A DNA stretch of 64,000 bases from Cyanophora paradoxa CCMP329 (Eukaryota; Plantae; Glaucophyta), in contig QPMI01000396.1 in assembly GCA_004431415.1 (NCBI GenBank), forward strand, positions 1 through 64,000. The letters run 5' to 3'. The notes beneath the pieces are model-generated. The model did not search any database. It had not been told where the DNA came from and saw only the letters and a list, made by a program, of their open reading frames with translations. Positions 1,211-51,793 of the stretch are shown piece by piece (positions within the stretch are counted from its first letter, which is position 1; each line of letters begins with the position of its first letter). The translations under genes were made by a program, and so were the position numbers.

Positions 1211-4200
1211 GCTCCAGCGGGAGAGAGGGACGCTCCCACTACAGGAGGGGGTGTGCATGATTCACTTCGCTCAAACTCCTTCTAATTCTCTGGCTTTTTT
1301 CAGCAGGGTCCTTGCCTGCGGGAGATTTTGAGCTGCCGTCACTCGTCATGGAACGCGCGGTGGGTGCTGCGAAAGATCTTAAGAGGGCGTTCGATGCGGT
1401 TGTGAATGCGACGAATCTGTTGCCGTGGGAAGGCGACGATTGGCTACCCCTCAGTATGTTCTTGTATCTTGATTTTTTGTACTCTCATCTATTTTTGAAT
1501 GTGTCTTTCCTTCCAGCCAAACCGGTGTTTCCGCCTGAGATCTTCTGGAACGTCCCTGGGAATATCCGAGGGCATTGTGGTCTTTACTTGTTGCTGAACA
1601 ATATTATGACGGCAGTCTTCAAATTGAAGTACAACTTGCGGGAAGCAGCGGAGGCCTTCAACAAGTTTGTCGTCCTAACCCAACGGCGTTCGTACAGCAT
1701 TCATCTACACAGTACCATGGAGCGTGCCTTCAACTGGCTGCTTAACTCTAAATCAGTCACTTTGGAGGACGCGGCTGAAATATCTGCGTACGGGTCATCT
1801 AATGCCTTCGACACGTCATTCCTGGATGACGAGGCCACGTCGAACATGCGCCAGATGACAGAGACGACCTTCAAGTCGTGGGTTGCACAGGGACTGACGC
1901 CCCGTGAAATTGTGGTGGAACTAGCGAAGATGCGCGATGACGGAGTGAAACACTATCTGCACGTCGAGATGATGGCTGCGTCGTTCATCAATTTCATTGA
2001 ATTATCGCGGATCGAAGAGGTCTCGAAGGCTACTTACGGATCGATGTGGGATGATTACTGTCGTCTACAGCATTTATTGTCGTCGCCGAATCCAGATATC
2101 GGTTCTGGGTTCAAGCATCTGACCCATCTTCTGGACTGCATCAGCGAATTGAAGAATTTGCGTCTTGAATTCGAGCGAAAGTTGTCGTCGTCGCACCCGT
2201 GCGCAGATGAAGCCGAGCTACTTTCTTTGCAATGTCCAGTGATATCCGGAATTCTAACCGAGAGAAACCGAATCGTCTTGTCTTGGAGGGACTCTGTGAT
2301 AACGTATGATTCAAACGGTAGTGATGGCAAAATGTCGCGCGTCGCCAAAGATGCATTCATCCGAATTGTTAAATCTACAATCACGCGATTGGGCACGTCA
2401 GTTGCGGGTGCCTCGAATTTGGTGATGCCACTGTTCTGTATCGCCTGAGTTAATACTGGAATGCGCAGATTGGAACGCGAAGGACGGAGACACAGTACTT
2501 TATAGTTTCGACGATGGGGTTCTTAGTGGATCTCTCAAACGTCGGGACATTGCTACCCTGAGACCGAACGAAGAATTTACTGATGAGGTCGTGAATTTTT
2601 TCCACCAGTGAGTTAACGCAGTTTCTTGCAGCGTCATGCGCTTTTGATTGTTGCCGTGACCACGAACGGTATAGTTGCTTGATGGAAAAGTTGCGTGATC
2701 CGACGTTCAGGGCTTCTGTACCTGCGACGAGTGTCTGTTTTTTCAACACGTATTTTACCGTGCTTCTGAAGGTGTGTATCATGTATCGCCTTATTCCGTC
2801 TTGCCGATATTGACTATGCACAGGCGGGGTACGGGGAATCGGATCGGGCTAGGAAATGGTTCGTTAAGGCTGGCGTGAATATTTTCAAAACCCAGTTTCT
2901 TGGGTTTCCTGTGCACCTGCCCAAGTAAGCGTCTCGCCTTCTTTTAGTGCAGCGGCATGCATACTGATCAATGTGCAGTCATTGGATTCTCGTAATTGTC
3001 TGCAATTTGGGTAGCCTCGGCCAACGAATATCGGACCCTCGACTGCGACCGGCTATTGTGCAAGTGTGTTCAATGGGTACGGACGAGAACGCATTCTTGG
3101 ACCGGAAATGTACACGTCTCCTTAAGGGCTCGCTTATAAGGTCGGCTTTGTGTATATGACTACGGGGGCTCTGTAACGTGAATCCGATTCAGGTTCTTCC
3201 AATCGGCGTACCGGGACAAGGCTCTGTTTCCCGGGTCACCTCGCGATATATTATCCGGTGACCTTGTTTTCAACTATGTTGTAGCCGAAGTACGTACATT
3301 CTGGCTGGATTATAATATTTAAGGCATTCGATTGATGGGGGCTGTTTGCAGGCAACGCGTCAAGGAGGCGTTGATTGCGGTGTTCATGTTTGTGTGAACT
3401 CAGAGCTACTCGTTACAGGTTGCCTAACCGAATTTATGCAAACTGAGGGTGGTAGCGTATCTACTCCACAGGTTACTGTTGTGTGTCGTCTCACTCCATA
3501 TCTCCTGATTTTGCTAATAGTTCATTTGCACCCCTGACGACATCGTGAATATGAGGACGCTCATATATTCCCTGGCTTGTGAGAAGGTGGGTTCTCATGT
3601 TTTTTGACCTGCATCATTTGAAATGTATGATTAATATATTTTGCGCGTTTATGGACTTCTCAGATTTCAGATCTACATCAGATTGCACGCAATGAGGACG
3701 CGATTCAGAGGTACTCGGACATGCTGTTATCGTTGGTGACTGCATGCGTTTTGCTTGGCTTATTGTTATTTATTTTATTTTCTCACCAACTGTTACCTAG
3801 CAATCCTCGGAACCTCCTGCCGACGAGCCTCGTGTTGGCCTACATGATTCATCCGGTCAGCGTGGGCTTCAACAATCCGATGCCATTAAATCGGTATGTC
3901 GTGCGCTCTTTCAACTGGCCCGTCTATTAATTCCAATGACAAGTTCGCAGGTTCTGAGCCGCGTTGCAGCCCGCGACGGGTCACCCAAGCTTGGCAGTAA
4001 ACTTTTGGAGGCCCGTCTCTCTGCGCGGAGTGCTCGCATGTCCCATTGTGCGGACCGTGGAGTTGACCCGCAACCGTCACGTCTACCCAATCGGCGTTCC
4101 AGCCTGCGAGTCGGCGATGATGTAGTCGCCGTTGCGGTTCCCCATGCGTTTGCCTTCACGCTGATCCCTGTGCAGGATTCCGGTTCGGCATTCGCACCTC

Positions 4201-6379
4201 CCGAACAGCCGGGTTTCATGGGGGGCGATGCATTGGGGCCGGCGAGTGACATGGAAGCCCGTTCTCTGGCCGTCTTGCCGGTGCCATCACCTGCCTCTCC
4301 GTCGGTCCCCGACCAAGGTTTGGTAGAAAAACACGCGATAATTATCTGTCGTTGATCGTTGCTGGCCTATTTGCAGCTGCTATTCAACAAGGTGTCGCAG
4401 GAGCGAGTGTACCTGGTTCACGTCGCAGTGGTAAGATACGAGAAGAGCCAGATGGTGAGGTTGATTTTTGGGCCTATCCTGATGGAATCCTTAATTAAAT
4501 CTGTTCGAGTGTCTGCTTATTTAACATGAGCAGGTGACCGCCAACGATCGAATCCTGCAGTTGTCCAGTTTCAAGTCGACGGAAAAAAGTATAAAATCTG
4601 TAGTTCATCTTCTGATGCACCGGTGCGGGTTCAATTAATATTTATCACACCATTTGAACATCCTCAATTATTCACTACGATCCTACCAGGATCAGTCCAA
4701 GGAAGATGCTGCTGACAGACGGCGCACGCGTGTATCGACTGGTGCAAGTAGCAAAAAGTCTCCGGGTTCGACACAAGGAATGGTTGCACACCAAGGCCGT
4801 TCTGCGTCCAAAAAGCGGAAAGCAAGCAAAGTAACTGTTCCCCGACGCGATGCCAGCGGCGTGAGTGATTAATAGTTGTACTCAATCGCACTATTTATGA
4901 TTCCCCTTTGAATATGCGGTGTTTTGTATATTAGGCTGGGAAAAGGGCGAGAACGGGTGATTCCGATGATGACGACAACGGTGCTGATCGTGTGAGTAGT
5001 TTACTCTATATATATGTGTCGATGATTCCCGTTTGATTCTTTGTGTTGTATCGAAGGATGCTGATGCTAGCGACATTGACAGTGTTTCTTTGTCGGTGAA
5101 TGCATATCTGTGCGATTCTCTTACTTGGTTTTTTTTGATGACCTTCGTTGGATCCCAGTCGGATACACCTCCTGGCCATTCCGGTGGCAGAAGCGGAAAC
5201 GTGGGTGAGGCACTATCGGTGAGTGGTCTCCCGATATCCAGCTCGACATTTGTATTTTCTGATCCCTGTTCAGCTTATACCAGCGACGTCGACCATAGTG
5301 GAAAATGAGCGGAAGTCCTTGAAATTTCTGTCGCGTAAGGCTCGGGTGGCGTGGATGGTCAAATCTTTATCTGCATCTGCGGATACCCTACAGAGTTCAG
5401 TTGGGCCGATGATTACATCAACGGGCAGTTCATCTGGACCAGTTGTGCCTTGTGCTAGTGGCTCCAATTTCAGCACTCCGCAGCTTCCGCTATCAATCGA
5501 TGACATTTTCACGTGTTTGGTCTCCGATGACTGCTCAGCAGTTCCGCAATTTGTTGCAGCATCCACTCCCGGAATCGGACCTGTCGCCTCCCGAAACTCG
5601 AAGATGTTCGACTTCGGCGAGAGACTGTATACGGCCATCGCATGCAATGGCTTGTCGCTTTCGGAATCTATAGCCAGAATTGAGCAGGGAAGATTGTGTC
5701 TGCTCTTTTGCTCGAGTAGTGCACTCTATTTCAAGCGAGTCCAATTCCTTTTGTGGATTATCCAGAAGGAAGGTACACCTGACGCTGTGTAATCCCTAGT
5801 ACTGCTCATGCTCATACGGTCTATGTCGATCGCAGGCGCACGTCAGATGATGCAGATGACTGATTCTCAGATCGACAGTCTTTGGGGGACGTTTCGCAAG
5901 AAGCAGATCAGCATTCGCTTCTGGCCGGAAGTGAAGGCCGCCTTGGCGTGCCTGTACCCGTCTTGTGAAGAAGAATCTGCCCCTCCGGATCAGAAACTTC
6001 CATTCGACCTCACGAAGAGTGATTGTGTTTTGGTGTTGTACCGGGTACGTTTCGGGCGATTTAATTTTTTGTTCCACGTGTTCTTCTTAACGCTGTTTGA
6101 CTCCAGATTGGGTGTCTCCTTGCACTACACCCCAATTTATTGAAGTACTTGCTGGCTGCTCCCCGGGTTGCGGGAGTTAATGCCTACGAGGTGTACTCGT
6201 ATCTCAGGCATGTAGTCCAGCATAAAAACGGCGGCCTCCTCGATCATGTTCGGGACACGATTGTTGCGGCGGCATCTCCAACTTGTGCTCCTGCCGTCAG
6301 CGCAGCATTTGCGTTTCGCCCTCCCGAAGAACTGAAAGGCTTGTTATCAGACGGGGCCAGATGGCCTGCATGGTTTTAG
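1..6379 (+). CDS. Large multi-exon protein with Ulp1/SENP (peptidase C48) SUMO-protease domain (~2470-3590); 5' end outside window
   Basis: Spliced exons read LKRRDIATLRPNEEFTDEVVNFF / VCFFNTYFTVLLK / RKWFVKAGVNIFKTQFLGFPVHLP / HWILVIVCN / QGGVDCGVHVC, which is the C48 motif order with catalytic His and Cys. Joining to the exons up to the stop at 6379 is inferred. Confidence 0.8.
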
Positions 6380-6604
6380 TCGCGACAGTGTGTATATGTT
6401 TCTGGGTCTTTGTACAATGCACTCTTTCCTTCCGTCTTCTTTGATGCCCTGCCGACATGTTAGGGTGCCGTGATGGGAGCTGGAGGGCGACGGGTGCTCC
6501 TGAACGGGAGGGTAGACGTGGCGGGGCCGGCTCTGTATGCCGGTGGTGGTGGGTCGCTGACTGGCTGATGGGGCAGGATCCCCGGACGATGGCCGGGCCA
6601 GTGC

Positions 6605-6732
6605 CGCGTTGCTTGCGGGGGGGGCTTGACCGGGAGCGACGGCGGGTGGGGCTCTATGGGGCGGCAAGGACGATGCACTGCGGCGGGCTGGTGCATGGGG
6701 GCGGAGCGTGCGGTGCGGAGGGCGATGGGCTG
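6605..6732 (+). repeat. G-rich dispersed repeat, copy 1 (direct copy at ~48413-48538)
   Basis: gttgcttgcggggggg...ccgggagcgacgg...ggggcggcaaggacgatgc.ctgcggcgggc.ggtgcatgggggcgga...gcggagggcgatgggctg occurs at both sites, each near an H3 sequence. Confidence 0.85.
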
Positions 6733-7998: not shown

Positions 7999-8199
7999 AT
8001 CTACCGTCTTGATTATGCCACGACTTTTACTGTTCTCGTTGCGCTCGTCTCACGCTGCAATTGCAGTCGACGCGTCGCTCGGAATAGAGGTCTGATGAGC
8101 GACGTAGGGGTACACAATACATCGAGTTTCATATCATCGTTACCGACGGCTTAAATGACATCGACTATGCTGCCGCTTGCCGACCGAGAATATATATCC

Positions 8200-10075
8200 A
8201 TGGGTGATGCTGCAGCAGATACATTGCCGCCTTCGAAACGTAGGCTTGTCGCGCACCGCACTCGAGACGCAAGCTGATTGAACTTGCAGGCCAGCGTTCG
8301 ATCACTAAGGTGAGACAACCGCAACTGTGTTTCTACGGATCATGCGCGGACGACGGCAGACAAGTCGACATCTGATATGCCGCAGATTGCCGCTCGTCAA
8401 GAAGCATCAACGATGAACGCAGCAGCAGAGAGAGCGATGCCTTCGCAACGTAGGCTGCTTGCGCACCTCATTCGAAACGTAGGCTGATTGAATTCGCAGG
8501 CCAGCGTTTGATCAGCAAGGTGCGACGCCACCGAAAGTGGTGCTGCTCGATTGCGATGTTCGAGGCGCAGGGCGACCAGATCCTGGAAGTCCTGGCCATG
8601 GTCACAATCGGCGACGAGTGTGCGGGGCGTAGGGACGTAGGCACATTGACGGAGCTGCCGATTCCTGCCGGGTATGACCTATTGTATCCGGAAAACGAGT
8701 TCGTTCAATTCTCGATCCCATCAATTGTGACTTTCCCAGTAACTGATCGAAAGAAGGCCTGCTGAGTGCAATATTGAAGTGAAATTCTTTGTGCCCCACG
8801 CAGAAAAGAAGGTAACATTAAGTTTCTCTGTCGAATATGTGAACCGAAACTAATTACATTTCGTCCCCATCGCAGACATCGTTACACACATGGCCGCGTG
8901 GATCCTTCAACGACGCGTTTAATTACTGGTGTATGAAGTACAACTTGCGCAAAGGGGCGTTCGTATTTGGAGGGAAACAAATACGGCCTGTGGACAGTCC
9001 GGGATGCGTTGGGGTATGCAATGGCGACACCGTTATATACGTAGAGGAGAGCAAGCTGACAGCTGAAAGTCTGAAACGGTGCGCGCTGAACGTGTACATA
9101 CCGGATGGTGATCTAACGTGGGTGCCGGTCCTCGAGCACGGCCGCAGGGAGGAAGAGTTTGATTCGTACGTCGAGTGTCACGATATAATGAACTCGCAAT
9201 TCCGATTATTTACGCTTGTTCAGAGTCGACGTTGAGAGTGCGATGGAGGTGGTGATCGTGGGCGACAGCGGGCACCAAGACATGAGGATGGTGGAAATTC
9301 TCTGATCTATATACTCGTTATTCGAGTGGATCTGTATCTTGTTATTCAAACGTTAGCGTGTGCATCGCAGGGGCTGAAAGTGAGTCGGGCGACCGGAATG
9401 TACTGGATGCCAGCGAGGCAAAGGTTCGTGTATGTACTTGATCGGGCCGCCGAGCACGAATAACGGACGCACCTGCTTCGCAGCGTGAACCTGCGGATGA
9501 CCGTGATGGGAACGCACGATTCTACACTACCTGCAGCATTTGCGTTGCACATGGTGCCAGGCCAATCGCGGGCCACGATACGTGACGTATATCTACGACG
9601 AACTGATTATACGCCGGTTCACAGAGTGACATAGCCGTGCTGATTGATCGACCTCTATCCGAGTCCATGCGGGTGTACGTTGATAAAATTATCGTGCCCC
9701 ATAGGCACGTTTTCTCCTGCCATATGGACGTCGCATGGATATACCACGTTACATGTCCCAATCATGCCCCTCAGGCACGTGTTTACAGGATATGACGCGG
9801 TTGAATTCGTGTACAAAGGGTGCTTGCTAAAGATAGGACCGACTCCGGCTGAAATGGATATGAAGCACGGTGATGAAATTAAGTACGTGCTTCTTGTATT
9901 TATTGCGTGCGAATGACGATGACACCTTTCCAGGGTAATACCATACAATAGAGTTGTCGGCTCGACGCTCGGCTGTGGTCTTCACGATTTTTGCTATTGC
10001 CTTCGACTACAACTGATGCAAGATGACGCCCTCCAGTACCCTGCCTCTGCTATCACCGACCTTGGTTCCCGCTAG
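8200..10075 (+). CDS. Multi-exon protein with two SUMO-like domains (Rad60/Esc2/NIP45-like SLDs)
   Basis: SLD1: FNDAFNYWCMKYNLRKGAFVFGGKQIRPVDSPGCVGVCNGDTVIYV. SLD2: PLRHVFTGYDAVEFVYKGCLLKIGPTPAEMDMKHGDEIKV. Both resemble the SUMO F.F.G..I....TP..L.M..GD.I signature. No C-terminal di-Gly. Confidence 0.65.
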
Positions 10076-11347
10076 GGCCTTGATCGTGAACTTGACCCCG
10101 TCGTACTGAGCGCCTCTATCTCAATACATTGAGTGCACCGCTCTCACTGTTTTCAATTGCCCCGCTTCTACTACCCTCCAGCGCTCTGTGAACATACACT
10201 CCGTCCATCCCGCCTTAGCTCCCAGCGCTCGTGCCTGTACTATCCTCCAGTGCCCGCGCCCTCCTGTACCCCGCCACGGGCGCCCCACCTTAGCTGTGCC
10301 CCGCCCGCACCCTCCGGCAACGCGCCCTGGGCATTCTGCATCAGCCGCGCTCCGCCCGCACCCTCCATCACCCCGCGCCGGGCACATCCCACTGGCTATA
10401 ATGCGTAGTTTACATGAGTATATTTGGTTGGAAAGGGTATTCAGATTCAAGGCACGAAAAGCCAAGCGGACTTTCCGTCGAGCGTCACGACCCTAGGCCT
10501 CCAGCCGGCGATCTGGTGACAGTAGTACTTCAGGCACAAAAATCACAGTGGACTTCAACCTCTGCAACATCCCTTTTGCATCTGTGCGCCAGACGCTAGC
10601 TCACATGGACCGGTGCGTTTCACGTCACCAATCGTGTGATTGGTATGGTCGCAATGTAACTTTTTTGTCGCTTGCGTTTCACGGACCCCCCCCCCCCCCC
10701 CGCCCGCCCCCCCCCCACCCCCCCGGGTACCGATCACCCTCTCTATACCTAAACTGCCTGTTCGCACGTTCATGGGCAAGCGGGGGTGCGCATTATCTCG
10801 TGCTGTAACTTCTTCTGCGTTTACATAGTCACAACGATCTATACTTGGTCTACGTTCTGACGATTTCGCGTGCAGACCTTGCAAGTCATCTAGTGTCACA
10901 AAGACAGGTGTAGCACAAGATACGTCTTCTGACTCCGAAGATTGCACGCCTGCTAGGTGCGCATCTCGGTTGCCATGCGAAGCTGAGTTCCCATATGCAC
11001 GTCTCAATTGCTGATCGTAGTCTACTAGTGCGTCCGTGCGCGCACGCTTGTCTGCAGAAGCTGTGCATACGTCGTCACCTCAGTCCCCTGGCTTTGCGCC
11101 CGTGCTGGCCGGGTGCGCATGCACGCGCCCTTCGCGTACGCCACTCCAGACCGCATTGCAACCTGACGCCGAACGAACAGAGCCGCCCATATATCCATGG
11201 ATTCCCTGCTTGAATCTGAGCATATGTCGACACCTCAGAACCCCGGCTCCACGCCCGGGCAGGCTGGGTGCGTATGCGCCCCACGCGTGTGCCCTCCATG
11301 ACGGCATTGCAACCTGACGCCGAACGAACAGAGCCGCACATATATCC

Positions 11348-13223
11348 ATGGATTCCCTGCCTGACTGCGTACTGGTGGAGTTTTTTCGAAGCCTGTCTTC
11401 CGATCGCAAGTCGGCCGTGGCGTTCTCCCAGTCGTATCAACGCGCGCGTTGCATTTTCCTGTCTTCCTCAGACTCAGTCCCTGTGTACGGGGACCGTGGT
11501 GTTGTGTTCGACCTGGACGCTGCACTGCACGAGCTTGGCTACGTTGATCCGCGCGAGATGGTCGACGATTTGCAAATGTCTGATATTAATGATGTCCTTT
11601 GCCGCTGGGTGTACCACCTCCTCACCCAGGAGAGCAACTTCTTGCGCATCGTGTCCACCGCATTTGCAGATCCTGTGTGGCGGCGCCCGTACATCGCTGA
11701 CTTTCTTCACCGCGTCATCCTCTGGGCTTTCGTGCCGGAACCTTCATCATCTCCCATCCCCGATGATCGGCGTGCTCTTGCATTGTCTACTAGCTCACTC
11801 GACGTGGAGCATGCTCGCCCAGTACATGTAGGATGGCTACGTTTGGCAATGACAACCAGTGCCAAGACGCTGATTGTGGACGACCTTGCGGCCGAAGATC
11901 TCGGCGTAATAGACGCTGCTCACGCGGATATGCCAACAGCGCCAGGCATCTGCATCCCTATCTACCGCAGCCTCCCGTGCGCAGCCACAGCGCTGCTTCT
12001 TTGCTCGGCCAAATTACTTACCAAATCCTCGCACTACGCGCAGGCTTGTCAAACCGTCTGCCGGGCCTTTTCGCATCAATAAACTTGTCATTTCCGGTAC
12101 TGCCATCGCGTACCACTACGCTACCAACTATAGCCAACTCGTCGACGCCCGGCTTGAAGCCAGGGAGGTTATCGTTCGCGGATCCCACAACACCTTACAG
12201 GACTTGCCGCCGCTGGCCCGGCCCCCTGTCATTCTGCGGCTTGAGTGCACTGAACAACCGTACCATGTGGAACGACTCTTCACATTGCGTGTCCCACACA
12301 TTCATATCATTCCCTCCGCACGTGTGTCACCTGCATGGGCCTCGCACATGCACATCAACCTCGAGCCCCGCTGGGTAGGTGACGGCAGCAAGCTCCAAGG
12401 CCCGTACCAGACAACGCATCTTGAAATTGAGATCCCAACTTCGCCTGTTGGTTGCATGCGGATGCAGTCCCTGCCTCGGTCCCTCGTTGTACTACGTTGT
12501 CCCGTTTCGGACTGTTGCCTGCAACCTGTAGCCTCTGGTATAGCCTTGCTTCCGCATCTCATATCGCTCGATCTCTCTGCTGCAGCCCTGTTCGACCATA
12601 GATATAGGGCCTCAGACATCGCTCGCTTTGCATCAGCCATCTCTTCTTCTACCCTTCGTCGCATTGTGATCCCCGTTGTATGCCCCCAGGGGGTCGAGTG
12701 CCTTGTTATCGTCAATGCCGTCGCGAATCTTGCGCGCAACTGCCGTGTCCTGGAGTCTCTCGGTCTCGTCGGCGGCATTCTGACGTTGCCAAGGCAGGTC
12801 CCGCGCTATGCGGCCGCTGCGGTGGCCGCAGCGTTTGAGACGTCCACCAGCATTAACGAGGTCTTTCTCGATGTCCCATCACAAGAGAACACCGTGTCCC
12901 GCGAGGTTGCAGCCTTCTTCCGAGCCTACATTACAGCTTTGCACGAACGCAGCACGATCGCCGATCGGCTACTCAAGGAGAAGCGTGATATCGCCGCGGC
13001 CGGAGCTCGCGTCTCCAAGGCATGCTCGCAGCCTGGCGAGGATGGCTTTCGTGGTCCGCTCGTTGAGGCTAAAGCAACCTATGAGGCTGTTCAGGCGGCA
13101 GAGACGCGGACCACCTTGCTCAGGCTTCGCGATTCCGAGCTAGCCGATGAGATTGCCCGTATACAGCAGGCCTTCTGTCCCTTCGAAATCGTCGATAATG
13201 ATGTGATTGTTATTGATGACTGA
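11348..13223 (+). CDS. F-box / LRR-like protein with C-terminal SIM-like motif (one intron ~11977-12043)
   Basis: N-terminal MDSLPDCVLVEFFRSL is F-box-like. A gtgcgc...cgcgcag intron joins ORFs 11348 and 12204 in frame. LRR-like segments LPHLISLDLS and LARNCRVLESLGLVG; ends VIVIDD*. Confidence 0.6.
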
Positions 13224-14165: not shown

Positions 14166-17100
14166 ATGAGGCGAAGGAGGAAGAGCCTACCCCACACGGG
14201 CCCCCTAGCCGGCTTCAGGGTTGCAGCTGCCCAACCTACGGGAGTCTTTCCAACGCCAATTGTTACGAAGTATTCGGACCCTTTTACACTTCGGCAGACT
14301 ACGGCCGAGGTCGACAAGTGGGACTCTGAGTTGCGATCGCGCTACTTTACGTATACTCTGGTATCAACTTGTCTCATCGACTAACGAATTTCAGCTATAG
14401 TAATGGTTTCATGTTCGCGCGTTTTCGTGCTCTCGTTTATGCAATCTTCAGGCATCAATGTAATACAGTACCCGTTTTGACGGCCGTTCTGGTAATGCCG
14501 TTACCGTTGCGCGACCAGCTATCGGATTCAGTATGAATTACGTGGTCATCAGGTCTTTTGTTTGAAGCACCCCCTGGATGACTGCAGCTGATTGCCTCCG
14601 CACCGGCGTTCTTTAGTTACCGCGCATTGGGACCTGCAGCTGCTGCGACCGGCTACCGGAACGCGGGTCAAGCTTGCACGAGTACTTGGTAGCGGTTTCT
14701 CATCGCTACCGGCGCAAGGTTGTTAGTTTCGCCGATTGATCAGCTTTGGTTCCATCGAACGGCTACTGGTACATCGGTGGACCGCGTACGTAGTGCGCAC
14801 TATCGCCTTGGTGGCGGCCGCAAGGGCGGGAGTACGGCTGATCACGTGCGTGCCAGCGTGTTTTCTCGGGACCCGCCAGTTCCCGCTGAAAGCTACTTTA
14901 GGTCGCATGCTAGCTGCCGCCGTCGAGTCCAGATTCCAACTACTTTCGCTAGCAAGTCATGTGCGTATTGGCGTTGGCATATGTTGAACATCGCGTCCTC
15001 TACCTTACTCTGCTTTAATCGGGCGCATGCGCGTAGAATCTTACGACCTGGTTCTGTCGAGAGTCGTCGCTGTACCTACACTCTGTTTTTGTCAAGGTCG
15101 TCGCTGTATATCTTGTCACCTGGTTGTTAATTCAAGGATCACTACCACTGGCAAGACACTGTATCGCGCCAGGTAATCCGTGATGGTGACGCTTTGTTAG
15201 CTTGACTTATAATTATGAGAGCAGTAACAGCTTTTCAAATGGCAACTCTTGTTGCACTTCCTAGGCAATTTATGTATGAATTCCCCTCTTCTCACTCGCA
15301 CTTCATGTCATTACCTGCTCCATCGTTTGTGCGCATCTAATGTTCTTGCCTTGGGTGCTGTGCACTGGATGCTGATGTCCTTGTTACCAGGCACCTTGCA
15401 ATCCGCCGATTCAGTACATTGCAAGTAATATATCCCGACCTGCTCATCACCTAACTGGGACTAGCGCAAGTTTATCCGCGGAGGTGACGTTGCGATGTGC
15501 TGTGCACATCTTTTGCTCGTTCTTGAATTCAGTTTTTGTCGCAGTTCTTCTATAGATGTACCGTCCTTGCGTCATGCACCGCAGCATTCCGTACCGAGCA
15601 TGATTTGCGGTACCATATGGCAGGGGCACATGACACTACACGTGATGGTATTTTCCCATGCGGATATTGTGCCATGGTCCTCGCCGACCGTCCAGCTTGG
15701 GATGCACACCGTGTGTCCGTGCATCATGTAGGCCGGCTACGTACGTGTGGGTCTCAATGCGATTGTTCTCCGGGTCTCTTACCTGAACTGTACGGATGTA
15801 GGGCAAAATCGTGCGTCTGTCCGTCGGAGCGAATATTCGAATGCGGATAGACAGACATTGCGGACTGCCGATACCGGTGAGTTTCTTTATTTTGCATTTC
15901 GTGCCTTCTCTCATTCTTAACATATCAGTGCTGCAGTTCGTCACGCATCTAACTCTCGTTGGACCGCGGAACATGCTAGGAGCGCACTTCGAAGTTTTCA
16001 CACCCAGCGTAATCGGTCGCTGGAACGTCATGCCAACTTTGAAACCATTTTAGCAAAGTGCATTTATTCTGCATCTTATAACCTGCATTAGTTTGTTGCT
16101 GACGTCTTGCTAAGCTATGAACCTGTACAATTCTGGAATGAAATCTCCAATCTCGATCTGAAGGATGCTGCAAGAGTGTTCTTTCTCAAGCTATACTGCA
16201 TCCGGCGCACTTGTAGTTGCTGCACCGAATCACGACGTGCAGACAAATTACATATTCTGCGGTGCAAGTGCATCGCCTCTGAGAGTACTAGTACCTCGTA
16301 TAGTCACAGTAAGGACTGTCAGTGCGTGACGGGCGACGTGCGATGTCATGTCTGTTCAATTATGAAGCTACACGGAATACCTTCGTCACAAGCTACAGTT
16401 GAATTTTGCAGCCGGTGTAATGCTTTCAAGTGTGCCCCCGATCGACCCTTCTGCCCCTTCTCAAGTTTGGTGCGTTCCAATGTATTTTCGGACTGCTCGG
16501 TTCACTACACTATACCTAATTCAGCGGTGCAAAAGAACCGTCTGCATTGTGTGGATGTGGATGACCGTACACGTAACCTTCTATCCGACTTAACCTACCC
16601 CGAATTATTGATGTGCCAACGGGTTAATAATTACCAGGTTCGGAGTCTGTCAGTATAATGCGAGTCATCTTGTTGTCGCTCATATTGCACGTGCCCTGCT
16701 ATTCTCAGTTAATTCACGTCCGTGGCCCGAAAGGAAAAAACGGTCGGAGGATCGGTGGAGGGCAGCTCGGCTCGCAAGGGCGCGTTATCTTTGTACCGTG
16801 CAATCCCATCAATAACATCAAATCAATATTTCCTCTGCCACCTAGAGGAAAAGTTTGCTTGGTCAACCAGCGAAAGCCGAAAGGTGGGGAGACCTGGTAT
16901 AATCGTGTCAGGTTGGACCGGTGCTTCGAGGTTCTTGAGTGCCTTCGTGACACTACAAAACACATATATTATCAGAACATACAACTACGGGATCCCAACG
17001 ATCCGGAGTTGTTAGCAGAAATAGATAAGTGGAATGCTGGCACGACAGATAATGTCATTAATCCTCGCGACACGGAGGACTCTGATAGCGACAACTCGGA

Positions 17101-20100
17101 AAACGACGATGCTGATTCGGCTCACATGAACCGTCCTATCTGCCCGTCGGTTGCCGTCAATTTAAAGGGGACTTCCCTCAGCACCCTTCCTGTGAACGAT
17201 GGTCGTATTCTGCGTGCCCATTCGCCGGAAACAGATGTGTGCTCCTTCTTGTCTGTTTATCCAACAGGTGCGATGCGCCCGCGACCATGTCACATTTGAT
17301 ATCATTCCTACATTTATTGTCAGGCACGCATGGTTTACACGACCCAGCTAGACCGATCCAACTGTCGGCACGTGAATTTTTCTCCCACCGTTGCCTCGCG
17401 TCATCATCCGCCCCATTTCAACGCGACCCGGCCGCTCTTCTTAATTCGATTTCGATTATACTCGATGACGATGCGTGGCGTGGATTTAACTTTGTCAGAG
17501 ATAATATCGTCAATGCTGTTTCCAGCGAAAACCGCGAGGCACATGCTGTCACGTCAACGACCACCATGACGGTTGCTGACGCTTTAAATTTAATCAACAG
17601 TACTGTTGAAGATCATTCCTTAGATGCTCTCGCCATTCGCACGCGGTGTTATCGTACGATGACTCGTAATGTGAATTTATGTTTTGTGTTCATTGCACTT
17701 CCGACCTTGGGCTAATGTGTCCGAGGACCACATGTACAGGTTCGTGGAACCGCCGCATACTGGAACAATGCACGAAATAAATTACACAGCATGTTTACGA
17801 CAATCGGATTTCCTCATATTTATATGACGCTGTCCAGCGATGATCTACATTGGCCCGATCTTCTTCGGGCCATCGATCCTGTCAAGTTCCCGTCCAGCGC
17901 CGCCGTCGCCGAATTTACTAAGAATCGGGACGATGTTGTAAAATTGCTGAACGAGAATCCTGGCATTGTGGCTGAGCATTTTGATGAACGGGTTCGCGCC
18001 ATGCTTGACCTCTTCCAATCTACGGCTGGTGAAGTGCTTTTTGGTTGGCCTGTTGTTGATTTCTTTGTCCGGTGCGCCGATGTTTTTGAATCCTGTGACC
18101 CTGCACATTTGCTGTCTTACCTGTTTCTACAAAGGTATGAAGTTCAGAGTCGAGGGTCGCTTCACGCACATTTGGTGATTTGGCTGGGCGAGCGCACCCG
18201 AGATGGTGTCACGACGCCCCCGCCCGTCCTAGACCCCGCAGACCCCGGTTTCAATGGCGAACAAGTCTGCGCGTGGCTGGATACGGTTGTTCAGACCGAG
18301 GTAAGCCATTACCGTTGTTGCTAATTTCCAGGATGCTGCACACTATTAATCTTGAATGTAGCAACCTCGGACGGAAGGTCCTTTCGCCCAAGAATGGGCT
18401 ACACCCCGCCTACAGGACTACGTGGCACGATTCAATCGACATAAACACTCTCACACATGTCGCATCGATCCCGCCGCAGTGGGCAAATTTCGTCGCCGTC
18501 GCAAGCTTGCGACCGTCGACGAAAACGCCGAGTTGCATGACCCTATCACTGATGCCACGAAGCTGAACGTGCTAGAAGACCAGCTACAGGCCATGGAAAA
18601 AGCTGCTCCGCACGAGCACGTGGCTCGTTCAGCCCGGATCGCCAAATTTATGGCCGAGTACAAGGAGCGGTGCAAGTGTCGCTTCGGATTCCCACATGTG
18701 TTTGCCGCCAAAACGCATCTGCGGAGCTCTCACGAAGAACGTTTTATGTGTCGTGGGGACCGGGAAGTGATATTTAGGCGCTTCACACAGGATGATCGCT
18801 ACACGAACAATTTCCACAACATTATCATCCAGCTCTGGCAAGCTAATATGGATATCCAAATCGTCACAAATCCGTACAAGATAGCAGCTTACATTTTAGG
18901 GTATATGACCAAAGACGAGACGGAGGAGATGAAGGCGGTGGAAAACGTCCTAAATGACCTACCAGAGGATGCGTCAACTAACCAGATCCTCCTAAAAGTA
19001 ATGTTTCTCAATTTCTGATGCTGCGCGGTTCCCTAAATTAACTCTACCGGCATTGCGAAATAGATGCGAAATGCCATGTTGGGGTGTCGCACAATGTCCA
19101 AGCAGGAAGCTGGGTTGTATTGTCTAGGTGCGTAGCATCAATGTAAGCCAGTATTATAATTATGCCTCATTTATGTATATCATCGCCTGTAACCATGCAG
19201 CATGCTCATGCTTGGGCACTCTGTCCAGGCATTCCGTTGTTTTTTTCGTCACGATCATCGTGCTCTGTCGGGGCCTACCTCCCTGGTAAACGTGGAAAGC
19301 ACCTGCGGCATAAACGGGAGCTCGAATTTCGAATGCAACATAATCCGAACGATCAAGATGCTTGGGCCGACGACCAGGTTGATTACTATATGGCTCGCAG
19401 TAAGGATCCCGACGGTGTCCAATCTGTCTTTTTATTGTACAAATGAAATCTCGCTACTGACTGACATTTCTTCTTGCTCAGGTGCAGAACCTGTCTTCGA
19501 ATCTATAACCTTCATGCAGTACATGAACTGGTTTAACTTACATTTTCTTGGTGATGCACCAAAAGGAGGCGGGCCAGACGCAAATCTCACGTCTGAAAAC
19601 GTTGATTGTGAGGGAGACGAGGATGAGGCGGAACTCAATGATTGGGAGCCTAATCCCGCGTGGGCGAATGCAGAGATTCGAAAACAGCATCCGCAAAGTA
19701 CTGCACCCTTGCGCTCAAAGAAGGCGGGATCCAGGTGAACGTTTACGTCGTAATTCGTTTGTTCTCACGTGCCCCTCGAGCTCTATCTCATTTATTGCCT
19801 GCGCAGTGTGTGCCCTCGGTCTTCTCTGTTGAGGCCCTTTCAACGCCACATCCTTCAACAGCGACGTCGACCGAGGACTGTGAGAGTGCGAATTCCAAAG
19901 GATGGTGACCCCGAAGGCCTGTACAGTCTGCTGTTGATGCACGTACCATTTCGGAACGAGCTACGTGATTTACTTGGTGTTGAGTCCGAGGATGAAGTTA
20001 CTCCTGCCGTCATTTCTGCTGCCGTCACCCGGCATCGTGCTACTATCGAGTACAATATTCAGTTCACTCACTGTCAAATGGCTGCCCGGATTGAACGGTC

Positions 20101-23100: not shown

Positions 23101-23818
23101 TGGGAATGCATAACGTGTTGCTTTCCGCTACAGTCTCTCCTAACCTAATTCCAGTGAGGTCCGCCTTTATTATATCTGATATGTCTCGTATTTAGAATGC
23201 AGTTCCCCAGTGGCTGATGCGGCATTCCACGCAGTAATTCTGGAGCAGGACGATGCATGTTTTTGTCAATAATTGACAGCATGATTGCGGAAGGGACCCT
23301 TCCTATTTTTACGCGTAATAGTGATAAATGTGATTGGGCGGATCGATTGCGTTCCGACGTGGTTGATCTGATGATGTCCATTAATCCGATGCATCCTCTT
23401 TTTCCTTTACTCAACTCAGCTGCCGTACCCGACGTACCCCATGGGCAACCGGCTCACAATTTTGGGGCCTCCGTTCTGCATTCGTACTGCAGCCGCATGC
23501 GAGATCCGAGAACTGATGGTAATGTATTGCCTTCAGCGGTCTGTTCGGGTTTCATAATTGACTGTTATCGCCGCAGCCACAAATCTGGAAGTCGCCTTCT
23601 GCGCTGCATATCTAGGTAGACCTATAATGGTATTCTTCGAAGATAGGAGCGTCAATCGCCGCTTCCCGTATATTCACACCGGAATGGATGGTACTTATCA
23701 CATGCCTCCTGCCGTGCGGTACATGCGTCCTTTGCTTCTGTTATACCACGGCATATTTCATGTAGACGGTACTCTGTTTTCTGTCAGAAACCACCACTAT
23801 TCTGCGCTAGTTCCTTAG
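14166..23818 (+). CDS. Helentron/Helitron2-type RepHel transposase: C2H2 Zn fingers, DUF6570-like domain, HUH Rep, PIF1 (SF1B) helicase, C-terminal OTU protease; many introns; start uncertain
   Basis: Zn fingers at ~15550-15730. LSDLTYPELLMCQRV...GGGQLGSQGRVIFVP is DUF6570-like. Rep motifs: RGTAAYW..MFTTIGFPHIYMTLSSDDLHW, YEVQSRGSLHAHLVIW (~18140-18183), CRFGFP, WQANMDIQ..AAYILGYMTKDE (~18840-18920). Helicase motifs: GPGGTGKS, IIIDEISF, FGDFFQLPPV, GLVNGALG, QFPFRLAWAVTVHKCQGLTL, YVACSRV. OTU motifs: SGAGRCMFLSI...LEVAFCAAYLGRPI...HHYSAL*. Confidence 0.93.
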
Positions 23819-24629: not shown

Positions 24630-25355
24630 ATGCAATCTGTAGACGCCGCACCGACGACCGTACGCGTGGATCGCAAGGCGATGCTTCCCCCGTATATAGC
24701 GTTCGAAGCGCCTCCCGGAGCGGGTAAAAGCACGCTCATTTCCGACTTGATGGTAGTCGCCGCGGAAGTAAACTGCGCGGTCAAGTTTCGCATCTTTCCC
24801 GAGCCTCTGCATCTATGGAAACCATGGTTGACTGGCATTTTTGCGGAAGGCGGCCCGCAACCTGGTGCCGTACTTGGCATGCAACTTCGAGCGTTCCTTT
24901 CCCATTCAACCCACTTACAGCAACTGTCAGCTTTGAATGCATGTAGTTCTGCCTATCACGATCGCCCGCTTGTTGGTCTCGTCGAGCGCTGCCATCTTTC
25001 CTCACAGGAAATCTTTGCAGAGTACTGGTACGCCCGTGGTTACCTCACGGATGCGGAGCGTGGTTTGCTGCAAGAAATTCAGGCATCTCTTTCATTTCAC
25101 GATCCACTTGCTGTCGTATCACTAGATGTATCACCTGGCATCTGTATGGAGAGGGCTCTTTCCCGGGGAGATAATCACGAAGCTCTCAGTACTATACCAG
25201 GACTCCACGCACGTTATAGTGACTGGATATTCTCTCTCGAGTCCAGTCGCACTTTACCCGTGATTCGTCTTGATGCTTCCATGCCCGTCAGAGACCTTGC
25301 GACTCAGTTACTTCCTCGTTTAGAGAGCAGTGTCCTGGGTCCGAAGAACATGTGA
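24630..25355 (+). CDS. Deoxynucleoside kinase (dNK/dCK family), intronless
   Basis: YIAFEAPPGAGKSTL (P-loop), FPEPLHLW, MQL, LVERCHLSSQEIFA (ERS-like), LDVSPGICMERALSRG (lid). Confidence 0.88.
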   Translation: MQSVDAAPTTVRVDRKAMLPPYIAFEAPPGAGKSTLISDLMVVAAEVNCAVKFRIFPEPLHLWKPWLTGIFAEGGPQPGAVLGMQLRAFLSHSTHLQQLSALNACSSAYHDRPLVGLVERCHLSSQEIFAEYWYARGYLTDAERGLLQEIQASLSFHDPLAVVSLDVSPGICMERALSRGDNHEALSTIPGLHARYSDWIFSLESSRTLPVIRLDASMPVRDLATQLLPRLESSVLGPKNM

Positions 25356-33439: not shown

Positions 33440-33615
33440 GGCTTACTATATTCTAGTCCATGTCCTAGCTAAAGATCTTCGCATCGCGGACTGAAAGCAA
33501 GATGTCGAATAAGACTCACTCCCAGGATTCGAACCTGGGTCTAAGCGATGTGAGCAGCCGTCCGGGACGGCTGGTCTAGATCTACGGGTACCGAATAGCA
33601 AAGCTTCAGCCCGAC
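33440..33615 (-). ncRNA. Third copy of the tRNA-like / Pol III repeat
   Basis: Nearly identical to 26272-26445, including ccaggattcgaacctgg and the cagccgtccgggacggctg hairpin. Confidence 0.5.
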
Positions 33616-47540: not shown

Positions 47541-48100
47541 ATGGCGCGTGTGAAGGTGACGCCGAAGAAATCCGATCAACGGATGGCCTCCAAGGCCGCC
47601 ACCGGGTCCCGCGGTCCGCGCAGGGCCAAGACGGGAACGAAGAGTGTCATTCCGGGAAGGAAACCTCACCGTTATCGTCCAGGTGCGAATGCTATCGCCC
47701 CATATCGTACCTCGCGGTGCGTGGATGATTACCACGTCAGCCCGAACCCGCAGGCACCGTCGCGCTTCGTGAAATCCGCAAATACCAGAAGACGACAGAT
47801 CTCCTCCTTCGCAAGCTGCCGTTCCAGCGGCTGGTGCGCGAGATCGCACAGAACTACGGCATGCCGGACAAGCGCTTCCAATCCTCCAGCGTCCTTGCGC
47901 TACAGGAAGCCAGCGAGGCGTACCTTATCGGCCTTTTCCAGGACGCAAATCTATGCGCTATCCACGCAAAGAGGTGCATTGCGACCTACTGATCATGAAT
48001 ACAACTACACTGCTTACATCTTACAGGCCCGACGCGCAGGGTGACGCTCATGCCAAAGGATATGCAACTCGCCCGTCGCATCCGAGGCGAGCGCACATAA
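47541..48100 (+). CDS. H3: Divergent histone H3 variant, 140 aa (introns 47683-47753 and 47974-48039)
   Basis: [100 protein letters not shown]; the spliced CDS is 423 nt. Confidence 0.97.
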
Positions 48101-48876
48101 ATCGTACGATTTCCAGGACGTGAGGTGTGCTCCGACAACTCCGGTGTAATCCAATTCAGGATACAGTATGTTTAACGCTTCACGAGATTATGTTGCACGT
48201 ACACTCAATGCAACGGATTGAAAACCGTAATAAAGCCCGTTGAGTAACGCGACGGACCAACCATCGGACGTGCACTAATTCAGCGGCACGTTATCGAATA
48301 CAGATGCACATGCTACTTGCATACTGCAGTGACTCGCTCATGTTGCACAGTCTTCCACTACTCTGGGTAATGCCTGGAGACGGGGGGCTGGTCCAGTTGG
48401 AAGCCAGCGCCGGGTTGCTTGCGGGGGGGGCATGGCCGGGAGCGACGGAGTACGGGGCACTACGGGGCGGCAAGGACGATGCGCTGCGGCGGGCCGGTGC
48501 ATGGGGGCGGATCGCGCGGGGCGGAGGGCGATGGGCTGCCTCCACATCTCTCGGCTGACGTGCGCAAGATTGTGCTCACCCCGGTCGCCATCGCCCTTGC
48601 ATGACCGACTCATCATATCGCTGACGGATGACGTTTGCCACGTTCTCGTCCGCGCTCCTGTAACGACATCGGAATCAAGATTTTATAGTATGGCGAAGTG
48701 TAGAGACGTGTTGACAAATTAAAGGGAGAGGGGGGCGACGGTACATGAGGAGGGGGGGGAGGGCGGTAGGGGGGGAGGGGGGTATGGAGCTTACCGCCGA
48801 ATGGCCTCCTCCGCGAGTACGGCCACCTGCATTGCAAGAGTCAGCCGTCATACTGAAAACGTCATTATCGGTAGTC

Positions 48877-51793
48877 CTATGCTTCGGTATGATTGAGTGT
48901 AAAAATCGTGTGGACCCTACAGTCGATCAAGTACAGAATCAAATCGAGCCGACCGGGGACGCCGATGCCGGCGCCTTTGCAAATCTCCACCAGCCGACCC
49001 CGAAACATCTTCATTGGATACAGCAGCAGCTCCGGCCCTGTCAATGGCAGCTCCTGCATGCACTGTAACCTGCTGCAGCGTTGGCTGAGAGTTCACGTAA
49101 GGGAAAATGGACGGACTCTGGAGATCCATCAGGGAGCGTGACAAATTGGCGAATATACGCGAGGACGGTGGGAGGCGTCCAGGTCATCACCGTCGCGGAG
49201 TCCGGGCCCACGGTACCCGGAGGTTGGGCTCCCATGTTCCCCGTGTTATCGTCGTCAACGCTGTCGCTCGCGGCATGTACCGGTGCGTTGGCATCTGACG
49301 TTGGATTACTAGGTGGTCAGAGACGACGTTCCAATAGAATATAACTTCGCTAGATCTAAAGTTGCTAGCTCAGGCACTGATAGCGCCTGCACGACCGCAC
49401 GTCCGTAATAGCGCACCTGCCTCCGGTCGTACTCTCTCGGTTCTCGCCCCTGCTCTCCGAATTAATCGGGTAGCCCGAATATTTAAACTCGATAGGTAAT
49501 AATTCGCACACCCTCTGATGAGACTTTAGCCTTCTTCGAATTCCGCGTGTTCGCACTTGGGCCCCCGTCCTTCTTTGCAGCAGAAGAGCTCTCCTCGATC
49601 ACACTACCCGCCGATTCGTACGCCTCCTCGTCCTCGTACGCGTCCTCCCCATCCGTCTCGCCCTCTACTCAAGGCGCCATGCGTCAGCGATTACTCACAT
49701 CGCATCGCTCGACATACCACTACTGGTTTCAGCGTTGTACTTGGGGCAGGTCTTCATGTGATTGGACAGGGTCTTCTTGCTGGCATACGTGCGATTGCAA
49801 TTAGCAGCGGGGCAAGGGAGACGGTCGTCGTCGGCCTTCTTGCTCGTAGCTTCGGAAGCTGCTGGATAAATTCAATGAGTACCGTTCGCACACCAGCCGG
49901 CGCACATGAGAGGCATGTTTGGCACCTGACTTCCGTTTGCATGCATCAATGTGCGTCCCCTTTCCTTTGAACGTTATGCCACAGTTATCACAAATAAACG
50001 GCGCCTGCTTCTTTCGCGCTTTCCCAGACGATCCTGCATCTCAGTCAGATCGGCTGCAGTTATGCATGATGTATGGGGAATGCAGTCAGCGATCGTGACC
50101 GTACCCCGTGACGCCTCGGTGCCCTTTCCTGCATCAGTCGACTCCGCCCCCTTCGAACCCTCGCGCTGGTTGCCTGCAATTGAGTCTAAGGGGTCGCTCC
50201 CTCGAGGGTGTTCGGGGACCTCTTAAATTCAACGCATCCTGCCGCTCACCAGGCCCTCCAGGTTGACTGTCTATACCTCGAGACTTGCCTGCGAGCATGT
50301 GAACTGTGACCATCTCGAGTGGATATTACGGTGCACCGGTTGCGTACCTTTCGATGTGGCGACGGGTGGTACGCCCGCCACCTCGCCTGCTTCCTTGCCC
50401 TTGCCAGTACCGCGCGATGACGCCATGCCTGCGGGCTCGAAGGACAATTAACTGCCGTATCCTTGCGACAGACGCTGCTCCCTTCGTTCGTGCACCTGAT
50501 GAACGAACCGTAGTCTGGGGGGGGCTTGATGCCCGCTCTTGTTTCACTTCGTCCGGGCGCCGCCACAGATTGGGCGGCGCAGGGACATTCGATCTCGTGG
50601 TTCTCGCCTGGGGGGGGCTTGATGCCCGTTCTTGTTTCACTTCGTCCGGGCGCCGCCGCATATTGGGCGGCGCAGGGACATTAGATCTTGTGGTTCGCAT
50701 TGCATCGGCGGGCTCGACTTTCGGCTGTACAGCGCGACCATCTTTGTACGCATCAGAACTACATATATCGCGCCAATTTCAAAGTTCCAATGACCGCACC
50801 TGTGCTGTGACGCCGCGGGCTCTTCTCTGATAGGCGCATCCCATCTGCGGCTCCAGCATTGCTGCCGCCTATTACGCCTGGCACCCCGCCCGAGCCTGCC
50901 GCAGAGCCGAACCGAGGTTGTCAGTCGCATCGTTCTAGCGGGGCTGCGCGCATGCACCTGCTATGTCGCCTTGGTCGCTCGAACCTGGTCCTGGGCCAAT
51001 CGTGACGTCACACCGCGAGCCATCGGAGGTCAGTTCCTTCACTCCGGCTGATCCACTATCGCTGCCGCCGGGTGTACATGCGCCCCCGTCCAAGCCTGCC
51101 GCCAACCCGAAGTTGTCAGTCGCTTCGTTCGAGAGGGGGTCCGGGCAGGCACCTGCGATGTCGCCTTCAGCCGGCGCGCTCGCAGTCTGACTGTCGCCTT
51201 CCGCGGGGTTATTTGCCGTCGCCGCCGCGCGCGCCGTCCCGCCCGTGTCCTTTGCACCTTCTGCCGAGTCCAGATCGATCACTGCTCGATTACAGTCAGC
51301 GTCAGGGCGCGGCGCTCGCTTAGTCTACGGTATCACCTGGAGCTCCGTCGCCTTCGGCATCGCCTGAAAGCGCCGGCGCCTCGCTCGTCGTCTTTCTCGA
51401 CTCCATTGTCTCGTCGGCCGAGTCCAGATCAATCACTGCTCCAGTCCGGTCAACGCCAGCACGCTGCGCTTCCGTGGCACTCTCACCTGATTGAGCCGCT
51501 AGCGCTCCTGCCGTACTGTTCCCTTCCATGTCCCTTTCGGCCGCGCCACCGCCCTCGTCGTCTTGTGCGAGCCTCTCGGTACGATCGTCGCCGGCGTGCG
51601 GCGAACCACACTCTCGCTCCATGTGCACCTAGTGCTGCGGCTGTCAGCTGGTTCCCTGTGGTGATGCTGTGCACGTGCACCCGACGCTCTGGTCTTCAGC
51701 TTCCTTACCTGCTCGCACCTGGCGTCTTACGCGCTTATTCCAACGTGTACCCCTTCGACCAGCCGTCCTGGACGGCTGCTCCCTTAGCTTCAT
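48877..51793 (-). CDS. Low-complexity multi-exon protein with two VIDLDS SIM-like motifs, two VKQE SUMOylation consensus sites and a C-terminal SAM-like domain; possibly damaged
   Basis: VIDLDSA at ~51430 and ~51275; 93-bp tandem repeat 50515-50700 (PDEVKQE); VMTWTPPTVLAYI...ELPLTGPELLLYP...GIGVPGRLDLILYLI is SAM-like. In-frame TAG at 50935; start uncertain. Confidence 0.45.

What the first reader, a model, noticed from the sequence alone, without database searches (positions are those of the whole stretch)
2470..51440. Coherent SUMO/ubiquitin-manipulation toolkit on the element
Seen: a Ulp1/SENP protease, a tandem SUMO-like-domain protein without di-Gly, an F-box/LRR protein ending in the SIM-like VIVIDD, an OTU domain fused to RepHel, and a protein with 2 VIDLDS SIM-like motifs, 2 VKQE sites and a SAM-like domain. 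Known: SUMO and SMC5/6 (whose cofactors include SLD/SIM proteins such as Rad60/Esc2/NIP45) silence transposons and extrachromosomal circles, and Helitrons form circles. Inference: an anti-silencing module of deSUMOylase, SUMO decoy and SUMO-targeted SCF adaptor.
Basis: inference. Interest (0 to 1): 0.85.

Follow-up and report, generated by a model that had tools for sequence, protein, structure and literature searches.

The report
Giant Helitron with SUMO-pathway cargo
A very large rolling-circle transposon region of the alga Cyanophora paradoxa carries spliced genes related to the cell's SUMO protein-tagging system, including a real double SUMO-like protein not found described on such elements; the claimed five-part anti-silencing toolkit is only half supported.

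Summary
The window is Cyanophora paradoxa DNA: a giant, probably composite Helitron2-like region with about 20 intron-rich cargo genes.

Confirmed: a spliced, transcribed 370-aa tandem SUMO-like-domain (SLD) protein without terminal di-Gly.

Motif-level only: a Ulp1/C48-like domain (His and Cys kept, triad Asp apparently Cys) and an OTU-like domain at the RepHel C-terminus.

Not supported: the F-box and SAM calls; LRR is a weak lead. VIVIDD, VIDLDS and VKQE are in frame, but each pair is one duplicated motif.

The SIM gene lies in an 18-kb unit with inverted hairpin ends that excludes RepHel, Ulp1 and SLD, so 'one element' is unproven. SLD2 has Lys where SUMO has the acid read by SENPs and Ubc9, arguing against a plain decoy.

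Ulp1, OTU and F-box-associated cargo are already known on Helitrons; I found no paper on the tandem SLD. The scan noted similar SUMO-themed giant Helitrons on other contigs of this genome (unchecked).

Best reading: cargo that dampens host SUMO-dependent chromatin surveillance by binding rather than catalysis (about 45%). New variant of a known kind.

The parts
1..6380 (+). Large multi-exon Ulp1/C48-like gene (5' end runs off the window; 473-bp coding repeats at 1-1212)
   Evidence: Threads open with 16 GT-AG introns from 2471 to a stop at about 6379 (model only); 5' part matches EukProt model tig00020553_g10732 apart from a 1-nt indel; RNA-like runs hold 0.45-0.49 of the words of 2400-9950, more than the 0.31 possible without this gene
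2469..3418 (+). C48-like catalytic domain, six exons: His 2980-2982, Cys at the expected Asp position 3067-3069, catalytic Cys 3376-3378
8155..10075 (+). Tandem SUMO-like-domain gene, 14 exons, 370 aa, no terminal di-Gly; SLD1 about 8760-9050, SLD2 about 9484-9885
   Evidence: Spliced in runs X15, X18, X19
10880..13223 (+). Spliced gene of about 690 aa, possibly LRR-like, ending in SIM-like VIVIDD (13203-13220); F-box not detected
16092..23818 (+). Helitron RepHel (HUH Rep about 17716-18950, PIF1 helicase about 20603-22330); 5' end approximate
   Evidence: Pfam Helitron_like_N E 1e-17, PIF1 E 3e-17; nearest proteins are other RepHels at up to 44% identity in the helicase
23235..23818 (+). OTU-like domain spliced to the RepHel C-terminus
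   Evidence: Motifs and in-frame GT-AG junction; no profile hit
24630..25355 (+). Deoxynucleoside kinase gene
   Evidence: Pfam dNK E 2e-12
26387..26405 (+). Perfect 9-bp-stem hairpin, candidate Helitron2-type end (second, imperfect copy at 26598-26616)
33555..33573 (+). Same hairpin; left end of a candidate 18.2-kb sub-unit
47541..48100 (+). Histone H3 variant gene
   Evidence: Pfam Histone E 1e-26
48600..51622 (-). Low-complexity protein gene with two VIDLDS (51436-51419, 51282-51265), two VKQE (50640-50629, 50547-50536), two zinc-finger-like motifs (about 50030-49720) and an unverified SAM-like end; 3' end approximate
51760..51778 (-). Same hairpin with its flanks inverted; right end of the candidate unit(s)

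Best explanation
This is a giant, probably composite Helitron2-like (HLE2) region of Cyanophora paradoxa. A RepHel-bearing block (Ulp1-like, SLD, LRR-like, RepHel-OTU, dNK) lies next to, or encloses, an 18-kb hairpin-bounded cargo unit (H3, SIM-zinc-finger gene). Shown: the genes, the splicing and transcription of the SLD and LRR-like genes, the SUMO-like sequence of both SLDs. Inferred: RepHel moves these units by rolling-circle transposition; the cargo genes are old captures kept expressed by selection; the SUMO-derived ones work mostly as altered binders that dampen host SUMO-dependent chromatin surveillance of the element. On this reading the SLD protein resembles NIP45/Rad60 but cannot engage Ubc9, and the Ulp1-like domain is a slow protease or a SUMO-conjugate binder. 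It is a loose set of chromatin-modulating cargo, not a demonstrated three-step pathway.
For: RepHel domains with nearest labelled kin among HLE2-type proteins such as Fusarium RepHel. Inverted hairpin ends, several copies on one side, as in FoHeli (PMC5148889). Open frames kept across many introns and spliced in three independent RNA-like runs. The two coding SNPs seen in the SLD gene are synonymous (too few to test). Cargo GC3 mostly 0.5-0.64 against about 0.9 in the GC-rich gene at 55 kb. SLD2 Lys aligns with the SUMO D67K exchange that blocks Ulp1/SENP cleavage (PMC6548132). NFATC2IP binds SMC5 by SLD1 and UBC9 by SLD2, and D394R abolishes the latter (PMC11065178); that D394 is the same position is my own knowledge. 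Precedent: Ulp1-bearing VANC/KIU anti-silencing genes (PMC13317346).
Against: No functional data. No close relatives could be fetched, so conservation of the set across elements is untested. The LRR-like gene shows 9 amino-acid-changing and 6 silent differences between runs, which is no sign of strong constraint. The left end of the RepHel block is outside the window. C48 and OTU domains are common transposon cargo with unknown function.
Confidence: 0.45

Rival explanations
1. Chance collection: Helitrons capture nuclear genes indiscriminately. The SUMO theme is a selection of 5 from about 20 cargo genes, two of them (C48, OTU) routine transposon cargo and two (F-box, SIMs) over-called. The SLD gene is a captured, drifting NIP45-like copy.
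For: F-box and SAM unsupported; SUMO-site consensus occurs about 0.5 times per 700 aa in unrelated RepHels; duplicated motifs are single events; 3 of 34 long RepHel relatives carry C48 and about 4 carry OTU; HELIANO lists OTU, FBA_3, UCH and C48.
Against: The SLD gene is intact over 13 introns and transcribed; the VIDL[DT]-type SIM is rare in the background set (2 in 136,400 aa); other contigs of this genome were noted with similar cargo (unchecked).
Confidence: 0.3
2. One reading: one element encodes an active deSUMOylase, a SUMO decoy and a SUMO-targeted SCF adaptor that together lift SUMO/SMC5/6 silencing of Helitron circles.
For: SLDs real; His and Cys of the C48-like domain kept; terminal VIVIDD in frame; SMC5/6 plasmid silencing depends on SUMO in human cells (PMC12656486); HLE2 circles reported (PMC5148889).
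Against: Triad Asp apparently replaced; SLD2 charge reversal; no F-box signal; SIM gene in a separately bounded unit; nothing tested on such a pathway in glaucophytes.
Confidence: 0.12
3. Protection of the transposition intermediate: RepHel forms a covalent phosphotyrosyl protein-DNA adduct (established HUH chemistry, own knowledge). The C48-like, OTU-like and SIM-zinc-finger proteins shield it from SUMO- and ubiquitin-driven crosslink repair of the ZNF451/TDP2 kind rather than lifting transcriptional silencing.
For: OTU here and C48 elsewhere are fused to RepHel itself, which suits action on the transposase; the SIM protein has two N-terminal SIM-like motifs and a zinc finger hitting ZNF451_1st; ZNF451 is a SUMO ligase acting in repair of TOP2 adducts.
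Against: The ZNF451 hit is a single 24-residue finger and may be generic; no inter-SIM PxRP motif is seen (own knowledge of ZNF451); the C48-like gene is separate from RepHel here.
Confidence: 0.13

Closest known systems
Helitron2/HLE2 elements with captured OTU, UCH, FBA_3 or Peptidase_C48 domains (HELIANO, PMC11417382; FoHeli, PMC5148889)
   Same: RepHel, OTU-like and C48-like cargo, hairpin-containing inverted ends, several end copies on one side
   Different: At least 52 kb with about 20 intron-rich genes (FoHeli 5-11 kb); OTU lies C-terminal of the helicase whereas HELIANO finds it upstream; no endonuclease domain seen; SLD, H3 and dNK are not among the cargo domains named in that paper's main text
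RepHel-C48 fusions of ctenophores (P0039 Mnemiopsis, P0119 Pleurobrachia) and P0037
   Same: C48 domain linked to a Helitron transposase
   Different: Those are fused and keep His, Asp, Gln and Cys; here the gene is separate and the Asp position appears changed
VANDAL/KIU (Kaonashi) MULEs with Ulp1-bearing VANC anti-silencing genes; CACTA elements with Peptidase_C48
   Same: Transposon-borne Ulp1 domain; anti-silencing context in VANDAL (PMC13317346; PMC8978399)
   Different: Different transposon class; the role of the Ulp1 domain is unknown even there; no VANC homology was tested here
RENi family (Rad60/Esc2/NIP45-NFATC2IP)
   Same: Low-complexity N-terminus followed by two SUMO-like domains without di-Gly; weak hits to Rad60-SLD and NFATC2IP
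   Different: SLD2 has Lys at the acidic Ubc9/SENP-contact position; about 110 aa between the SLDs and a 45-aa tail; exons score better against SUMO than against NIP45; orthology untested
ZNF451/ZATT SUMO ligase
   Same: Two N-terminal SIM-like motifs and a zinc finger matching ZNF451_1st
   Different: SIMs come from a local exon duplication, 33 residues apart; only two finger-like motifs; no other similarity found

Membership tests
Helitron-like element (HLE) | RepHel with HUH Rep and PIF1 helicase | tested here: met
   Pfam hits above cut-off; HUH and Tyr motifs visible
HLE2 / Helitron2 | Asymmetric terminal inverted repeats with hairpins | tested here: inconclusive
   Inverted hairpin motif at 26387, 26598, 33555 and 51760, absent from shuffles, but RepHel lies outside these pairs and the left end is outside the window
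HLE2 / Helitron2 | RepHel groups with the HLE2 clade in a tree | not tested
   Only nearest neighbours seen (Fusarium RepHel, an endonuclease-bearing RepHel); no labelled HLE1 set was at hand
HLE2 / Helitron2 | Insertion between T and T, shown by an empty site | not testable with these tools
   The rest of the genome could not be fetched
Helentron | AP-endonuclease domain after the helicase | tested here: not met
   After the helicase come low-complexity sequence, the OTU-like exons and a stop
Ulp1/SENP (C48) protease | C48 motifs in order, with His-Trp and catalytic Cys | tested here: met
   (motif level; exon-wise E-values weak)
Ulp1/SENP (C48) protease | Triad Asp and oxyanion Gln six residues before the Cys | tested here: inconclusive
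   Best by-eye match to the invariant Asp-Ser reads Cys-Ser; an Asp 18 residues after the His is a weaker alternative; the Gln is five residues before the Cys
Ulp1/SENP (C48) protease | SUMO isopeptidase activity | not testable with these tools
   needs an assay
RENi (Rad60/Esc2/NIP45) | Two SUMO-like domains without di-Gly | tested here: met
RENi (Rad60/Esc2/NIP45) | Acidic SLD2 residue for Ubc9 backside binding | tested here: not met
   Lys in SLD2, Gly in SLD1 at the SUMO Phe-Asp-Gly position; equivalence to NFATC2IP D394 is own knowledge
F-box protein | F-box motif detectable by profile or structure | tested here: not met
   No hit in Pfam, PDB, Atlas or homologue search; fold uninformative. 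A very divergent F-box is not excluded
LRR protein | LRR repeats | tested here: inconclusive
   Atlas features point to RNI-like LRR clusters at 0.85-0.90 with low recognition; Pfam none
OTU deubiquitinase | Cys loop and His motif in an OTU fold | tested here: inconclusive
   Motifs present and ordered; profiles not significant
SAM domain | Profile match | tested here: not met
   No Pfam hit for the two candidate exons; exon-wise only

The most novel reading that the evidence does not exclude
A family of giant algal Helitrons encodes a natural dominant-negative mimic of NIP45/Rad60: SLD1 docks on SMC5 while the charge-reversed SLD2 fails to bring Ubc9, lowering SMC5/6-linked SUMOylation on the element's circles. 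A SUMO-conjugate-binding C48-like protein, a SIM-zinc-finger protein and its own H3 help, making it a virus-like counter-defence against SMC5/6 encoded by a transposon.
Probability: 0.12. Interest if true: 0.85.

Novelty: new variant of a known kind. Interest (0 to 1): 0.5.

Why it matters
Transposon-borne Ulp1 and OTU domains have been catalogued for years without a function. A transcribed tandem SUMO-like protein beside them, carrying the charge reversal known to disable SENP recognition of SUMO, gives a concrete, testable hypothesis for how a rolling-circle element could counter SUMO/SMC5/6 surveillance, an antagonism the papers I read describe for viruses. It also documents Helitron-like regions of at least 52 kb with about 20 genes in a glaucophyte.

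Tried and rejected
Homologue search with the F-box exon: nothing. Single-sequence AlphaFold of both large exons of that gene: pLDDT below 40, so no fold search was run. Exon-wise PDB searches of three Ulp1 exons: nothing. Three-sequence C48 and OTU profiles against six-frame fragments: not significant. No close RepHel relative in the 50% library, metagenome or viral contigs; hairpin pattern absent from metagenomes. P0151 has no contig on record. tRNA and Rfam scans: nothing, so the B-box-like repeat is not a called tRNA. My guess that the duplicated gene pair is RPA-like found no support. My first suspicion that the SIM motifs and the F-box ORFs are split by frameshifts was rejected: introns account for them. 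A self tblastx was too noisy to use. The primary VANC/KIU paper was not held.
Full report
Host and setting. Two homologue searches returned EukProt models of Cyanophora paradoxa that match the window: tig00020516_g9954, identical over the SLD exons, and tig00020553_g10732, matching 1-1594 apart from a one-base indel. The host is therefore this glaucophyte alga. The second model lies on another contig, so part of the region is present at least twice in that assembly, either as a second copy or as assembly redundancy; I could not tell which. From 1 to about 52 kb the DNA is intron-rich with GC3 mostly 0.5-0.64 (H3 0.74), unlike the GC-rich gene near 55 kb (about 0.9) and the AT-rich, fibre-like genes at 57-64 kb.

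RepHel. Pfam finds Helitron_like_N and PIF1 above cut-off. The nearest proteins in a 1.8-billion library are other RepHels at no more than 44% identity in the helicase, among them Fusarium and endonuclease-bearing ones; no close sibling could be fetched. After the helicase come a low-complexity stretch and two exons with an OTU-like Cys loop, middle motif and His-Tyr motif, joined in frame by GT-AG introns. The motif pair is rare in shuffles (1 of 100) but no profile reaches significance. OTU on Helitrons is known, although HELIANO places it upstream of RepHel.

Ulp1-like gene. Six exons at 2469-3418 give a 220-aa frame with the C48 motifs in order; the His-Trp and DCG motifs at this spacing appeared in none of 100 shuffles, and the last exon's only Pfam and PDB hits are Peptidase_C48 and yeast Ulp1, both weak. 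Three RepHel relatives from other organisms carry a fused C48 domain with invariant His, Asp-Ser, Gln and Cys. Against them, the window's best-fitting Asp position reads Cys-Ser and the Gln is one residue closer to the catalytic Cys. This alignment is by eye across an insertion, and an Asp 18 residues after the His is a weaker alternative, so activity is open. The gene threads open to about 6380. RNA-like runs hold 45-49% of the words of 2400-9950, while the SLD exons plus all of 6450-8145 could give only 31%, so the gene is probably transcribed (indirect).

SLD gene. This is the firmest result. The product is 370 aa, with its only Gly-Gly inside SLD1. A profile of the two SLD exons ranks SUMOs first (E 8e-4 for a single SUMO domain) and reaches NFATC2IP; the SLD2 exon alone returns only SUMO, Smt3 or SUMO-tagged chains and Pfam Rad60-SLD at E 0.04. 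SLD2 has Lys, and SLD1 Gly, where SUMO has Asp in Phe-Asp-Gly. In one search this Lys aligns with the engineered D67K SUMO, which resists Ulp1 and SENP2 (PMC6548132). NFATC2IP D394R and Rad60 E380R abolish Ubc9 binding (PMC11065178); from my own knowledge this is the same position. SLD2 is therefore predicted to be a poor decoy for SUMO proteases and a poor Ubc9 recruiter. None of the 150 RepHel relatives carried an SLD, and I found no paper on a transposon-encoded tandem SLD.

'F-box/LRR' gene. RNA joins the two overlapping ORFs through intron 11977-12043 into one frame of about 690 aa ending in VIVIDD. The F-box rests on a short by-eye motif; Pfam, PDB, the Atlas and the homologue search gave nothing, and folds were uninformative. 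The Atlas leans to RNI-like LRR clusters, below its own reliability mark. Differences between runs are 9 amino-acid-changing and 6 silent.

SIM gene. The pairs arise from a 154-nt exon duplication and a 93-nt tandem repeat, so each is one event. The VIDL[DT] form is rare in background proteins, the SUMO-site consensus common. SAM has no Pfam support; one of two zinc-finger-like motifs passes the cut-off for ZNF451_1st.

One element? A perfect hairpin with conserved flanks occurs at 26387, 26598 and 33555 in one orientation and at 51760 inverted, never in shuffles. It recalls the hairpin-bearing asymmetric inverted repeats and multiple heads of FoHeli. RepHel, Ulp1, SLD and the LRR-like gene lie outside all these pairs. 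An inverted paralogous gene pair (about 28.4-31.0 and 44.6-47.1 kb, 64% identical) and an orphan H3 exon at 7.04 kb also suggest a composite.

Mechanism and rivals. The best-supported reading (0.45) is a composite HLE2-like region whose expressed cargo includes altered SUMO-pathway proteins acting mainly as binders against host chromatin surveillance; function is inferred throughout.

Comparison and novelty. OTU, C48, UCH and F-box-associated domains are catalogued Helitron cargo; Ulp1 domains occur in MULE and CACTA elements, in VANDAL within anti-silencing genes, with function unknown. New here are the tandem SLD gene with its charge reversal, the size and gene count, and the C-terminal OTU. 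Earlier first-reader notes report SUMO-themed giant Helitrons on other contigs of this genome; I could not check them and they do not raise the score. Verdict: new variant of a known kind, interest 0.5.

Left out. 

Noticed in passing
window 47541-48100 (+) and 7042-7089 (+): Histone H3 variant with a rewired tail; an orphan copy of its last exon lies at 7.04 kb, and a 136-nt stretch is shared between 6597-6732 and 48403-48538.
   Followed up: partly
window 28400-31000 (-) and 44600-47060 (+): Inverted paralogous multi-exon genes, 64-74% identical, no Pfam or PDB match.
   Followed up: partly
window 25865-26700, 32336-33650, 43590-43703: GC-rich 122-bp arrays followed by a 211-bp unit holding a tRNA B-box-like motif on the minus strand and the hairpin; not called as tRNA by ARAGORN or Rfam.
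   Followed up: partly
window 24630-25355 (+): Deoxynucleoside kinase directly downstream of RepHel.
   Followed up: partly
window 35496-35657 and 40945-41106: 162-nt inverted duplicate (88%) with open frames on both copies; unknown.
   Followed up: no
window 13843-13911: Intron on the minus strand in RNA contigs: an antisense transcript meets or overlaps the 3' end of the LRR-like gene.
   Followed up: no
window 9705-9774: GC-AG intron in the SLD gene; an 18-nt micro-exon at 9148-9165.
   Followed up: yes
window 8100-14050: Runs X18 and X19 differ from the window and from each other at several sites (other strains or several copies); DNA run X1 has depth about 780, with no genome average to compare.
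   Followed up: no
window 52100-53860: Palindrome-rich non-coding stretch with a perfect 34-nt and an adjacent 22-nt palindrome at 53809-53862; may be the end of the neighbouring virus-like element.
   Followed up: no
window 56800-64000 (-): AT-rich, intron-free fibre-like paralogues and 57-bp and 36-bp repeats; looks like an endogenous algal virus, already noted by the scan.
   Followed up: no
window 43729-44094 (-), 39861-40763 (+), 7462-8049 (-), 38570-39403 (-): Further cargo ORFs with no function assigned; the first is Cys/His-rich. The entry for 7462-8049 came back empty in Pfam like the others.
   Followed up: partly
P0037, P0039, P0119: RepHel proteins of ctenophores and an unlabelled assembly with an intact C-terminal C48 domain fused in frame.
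   Followed up: yes
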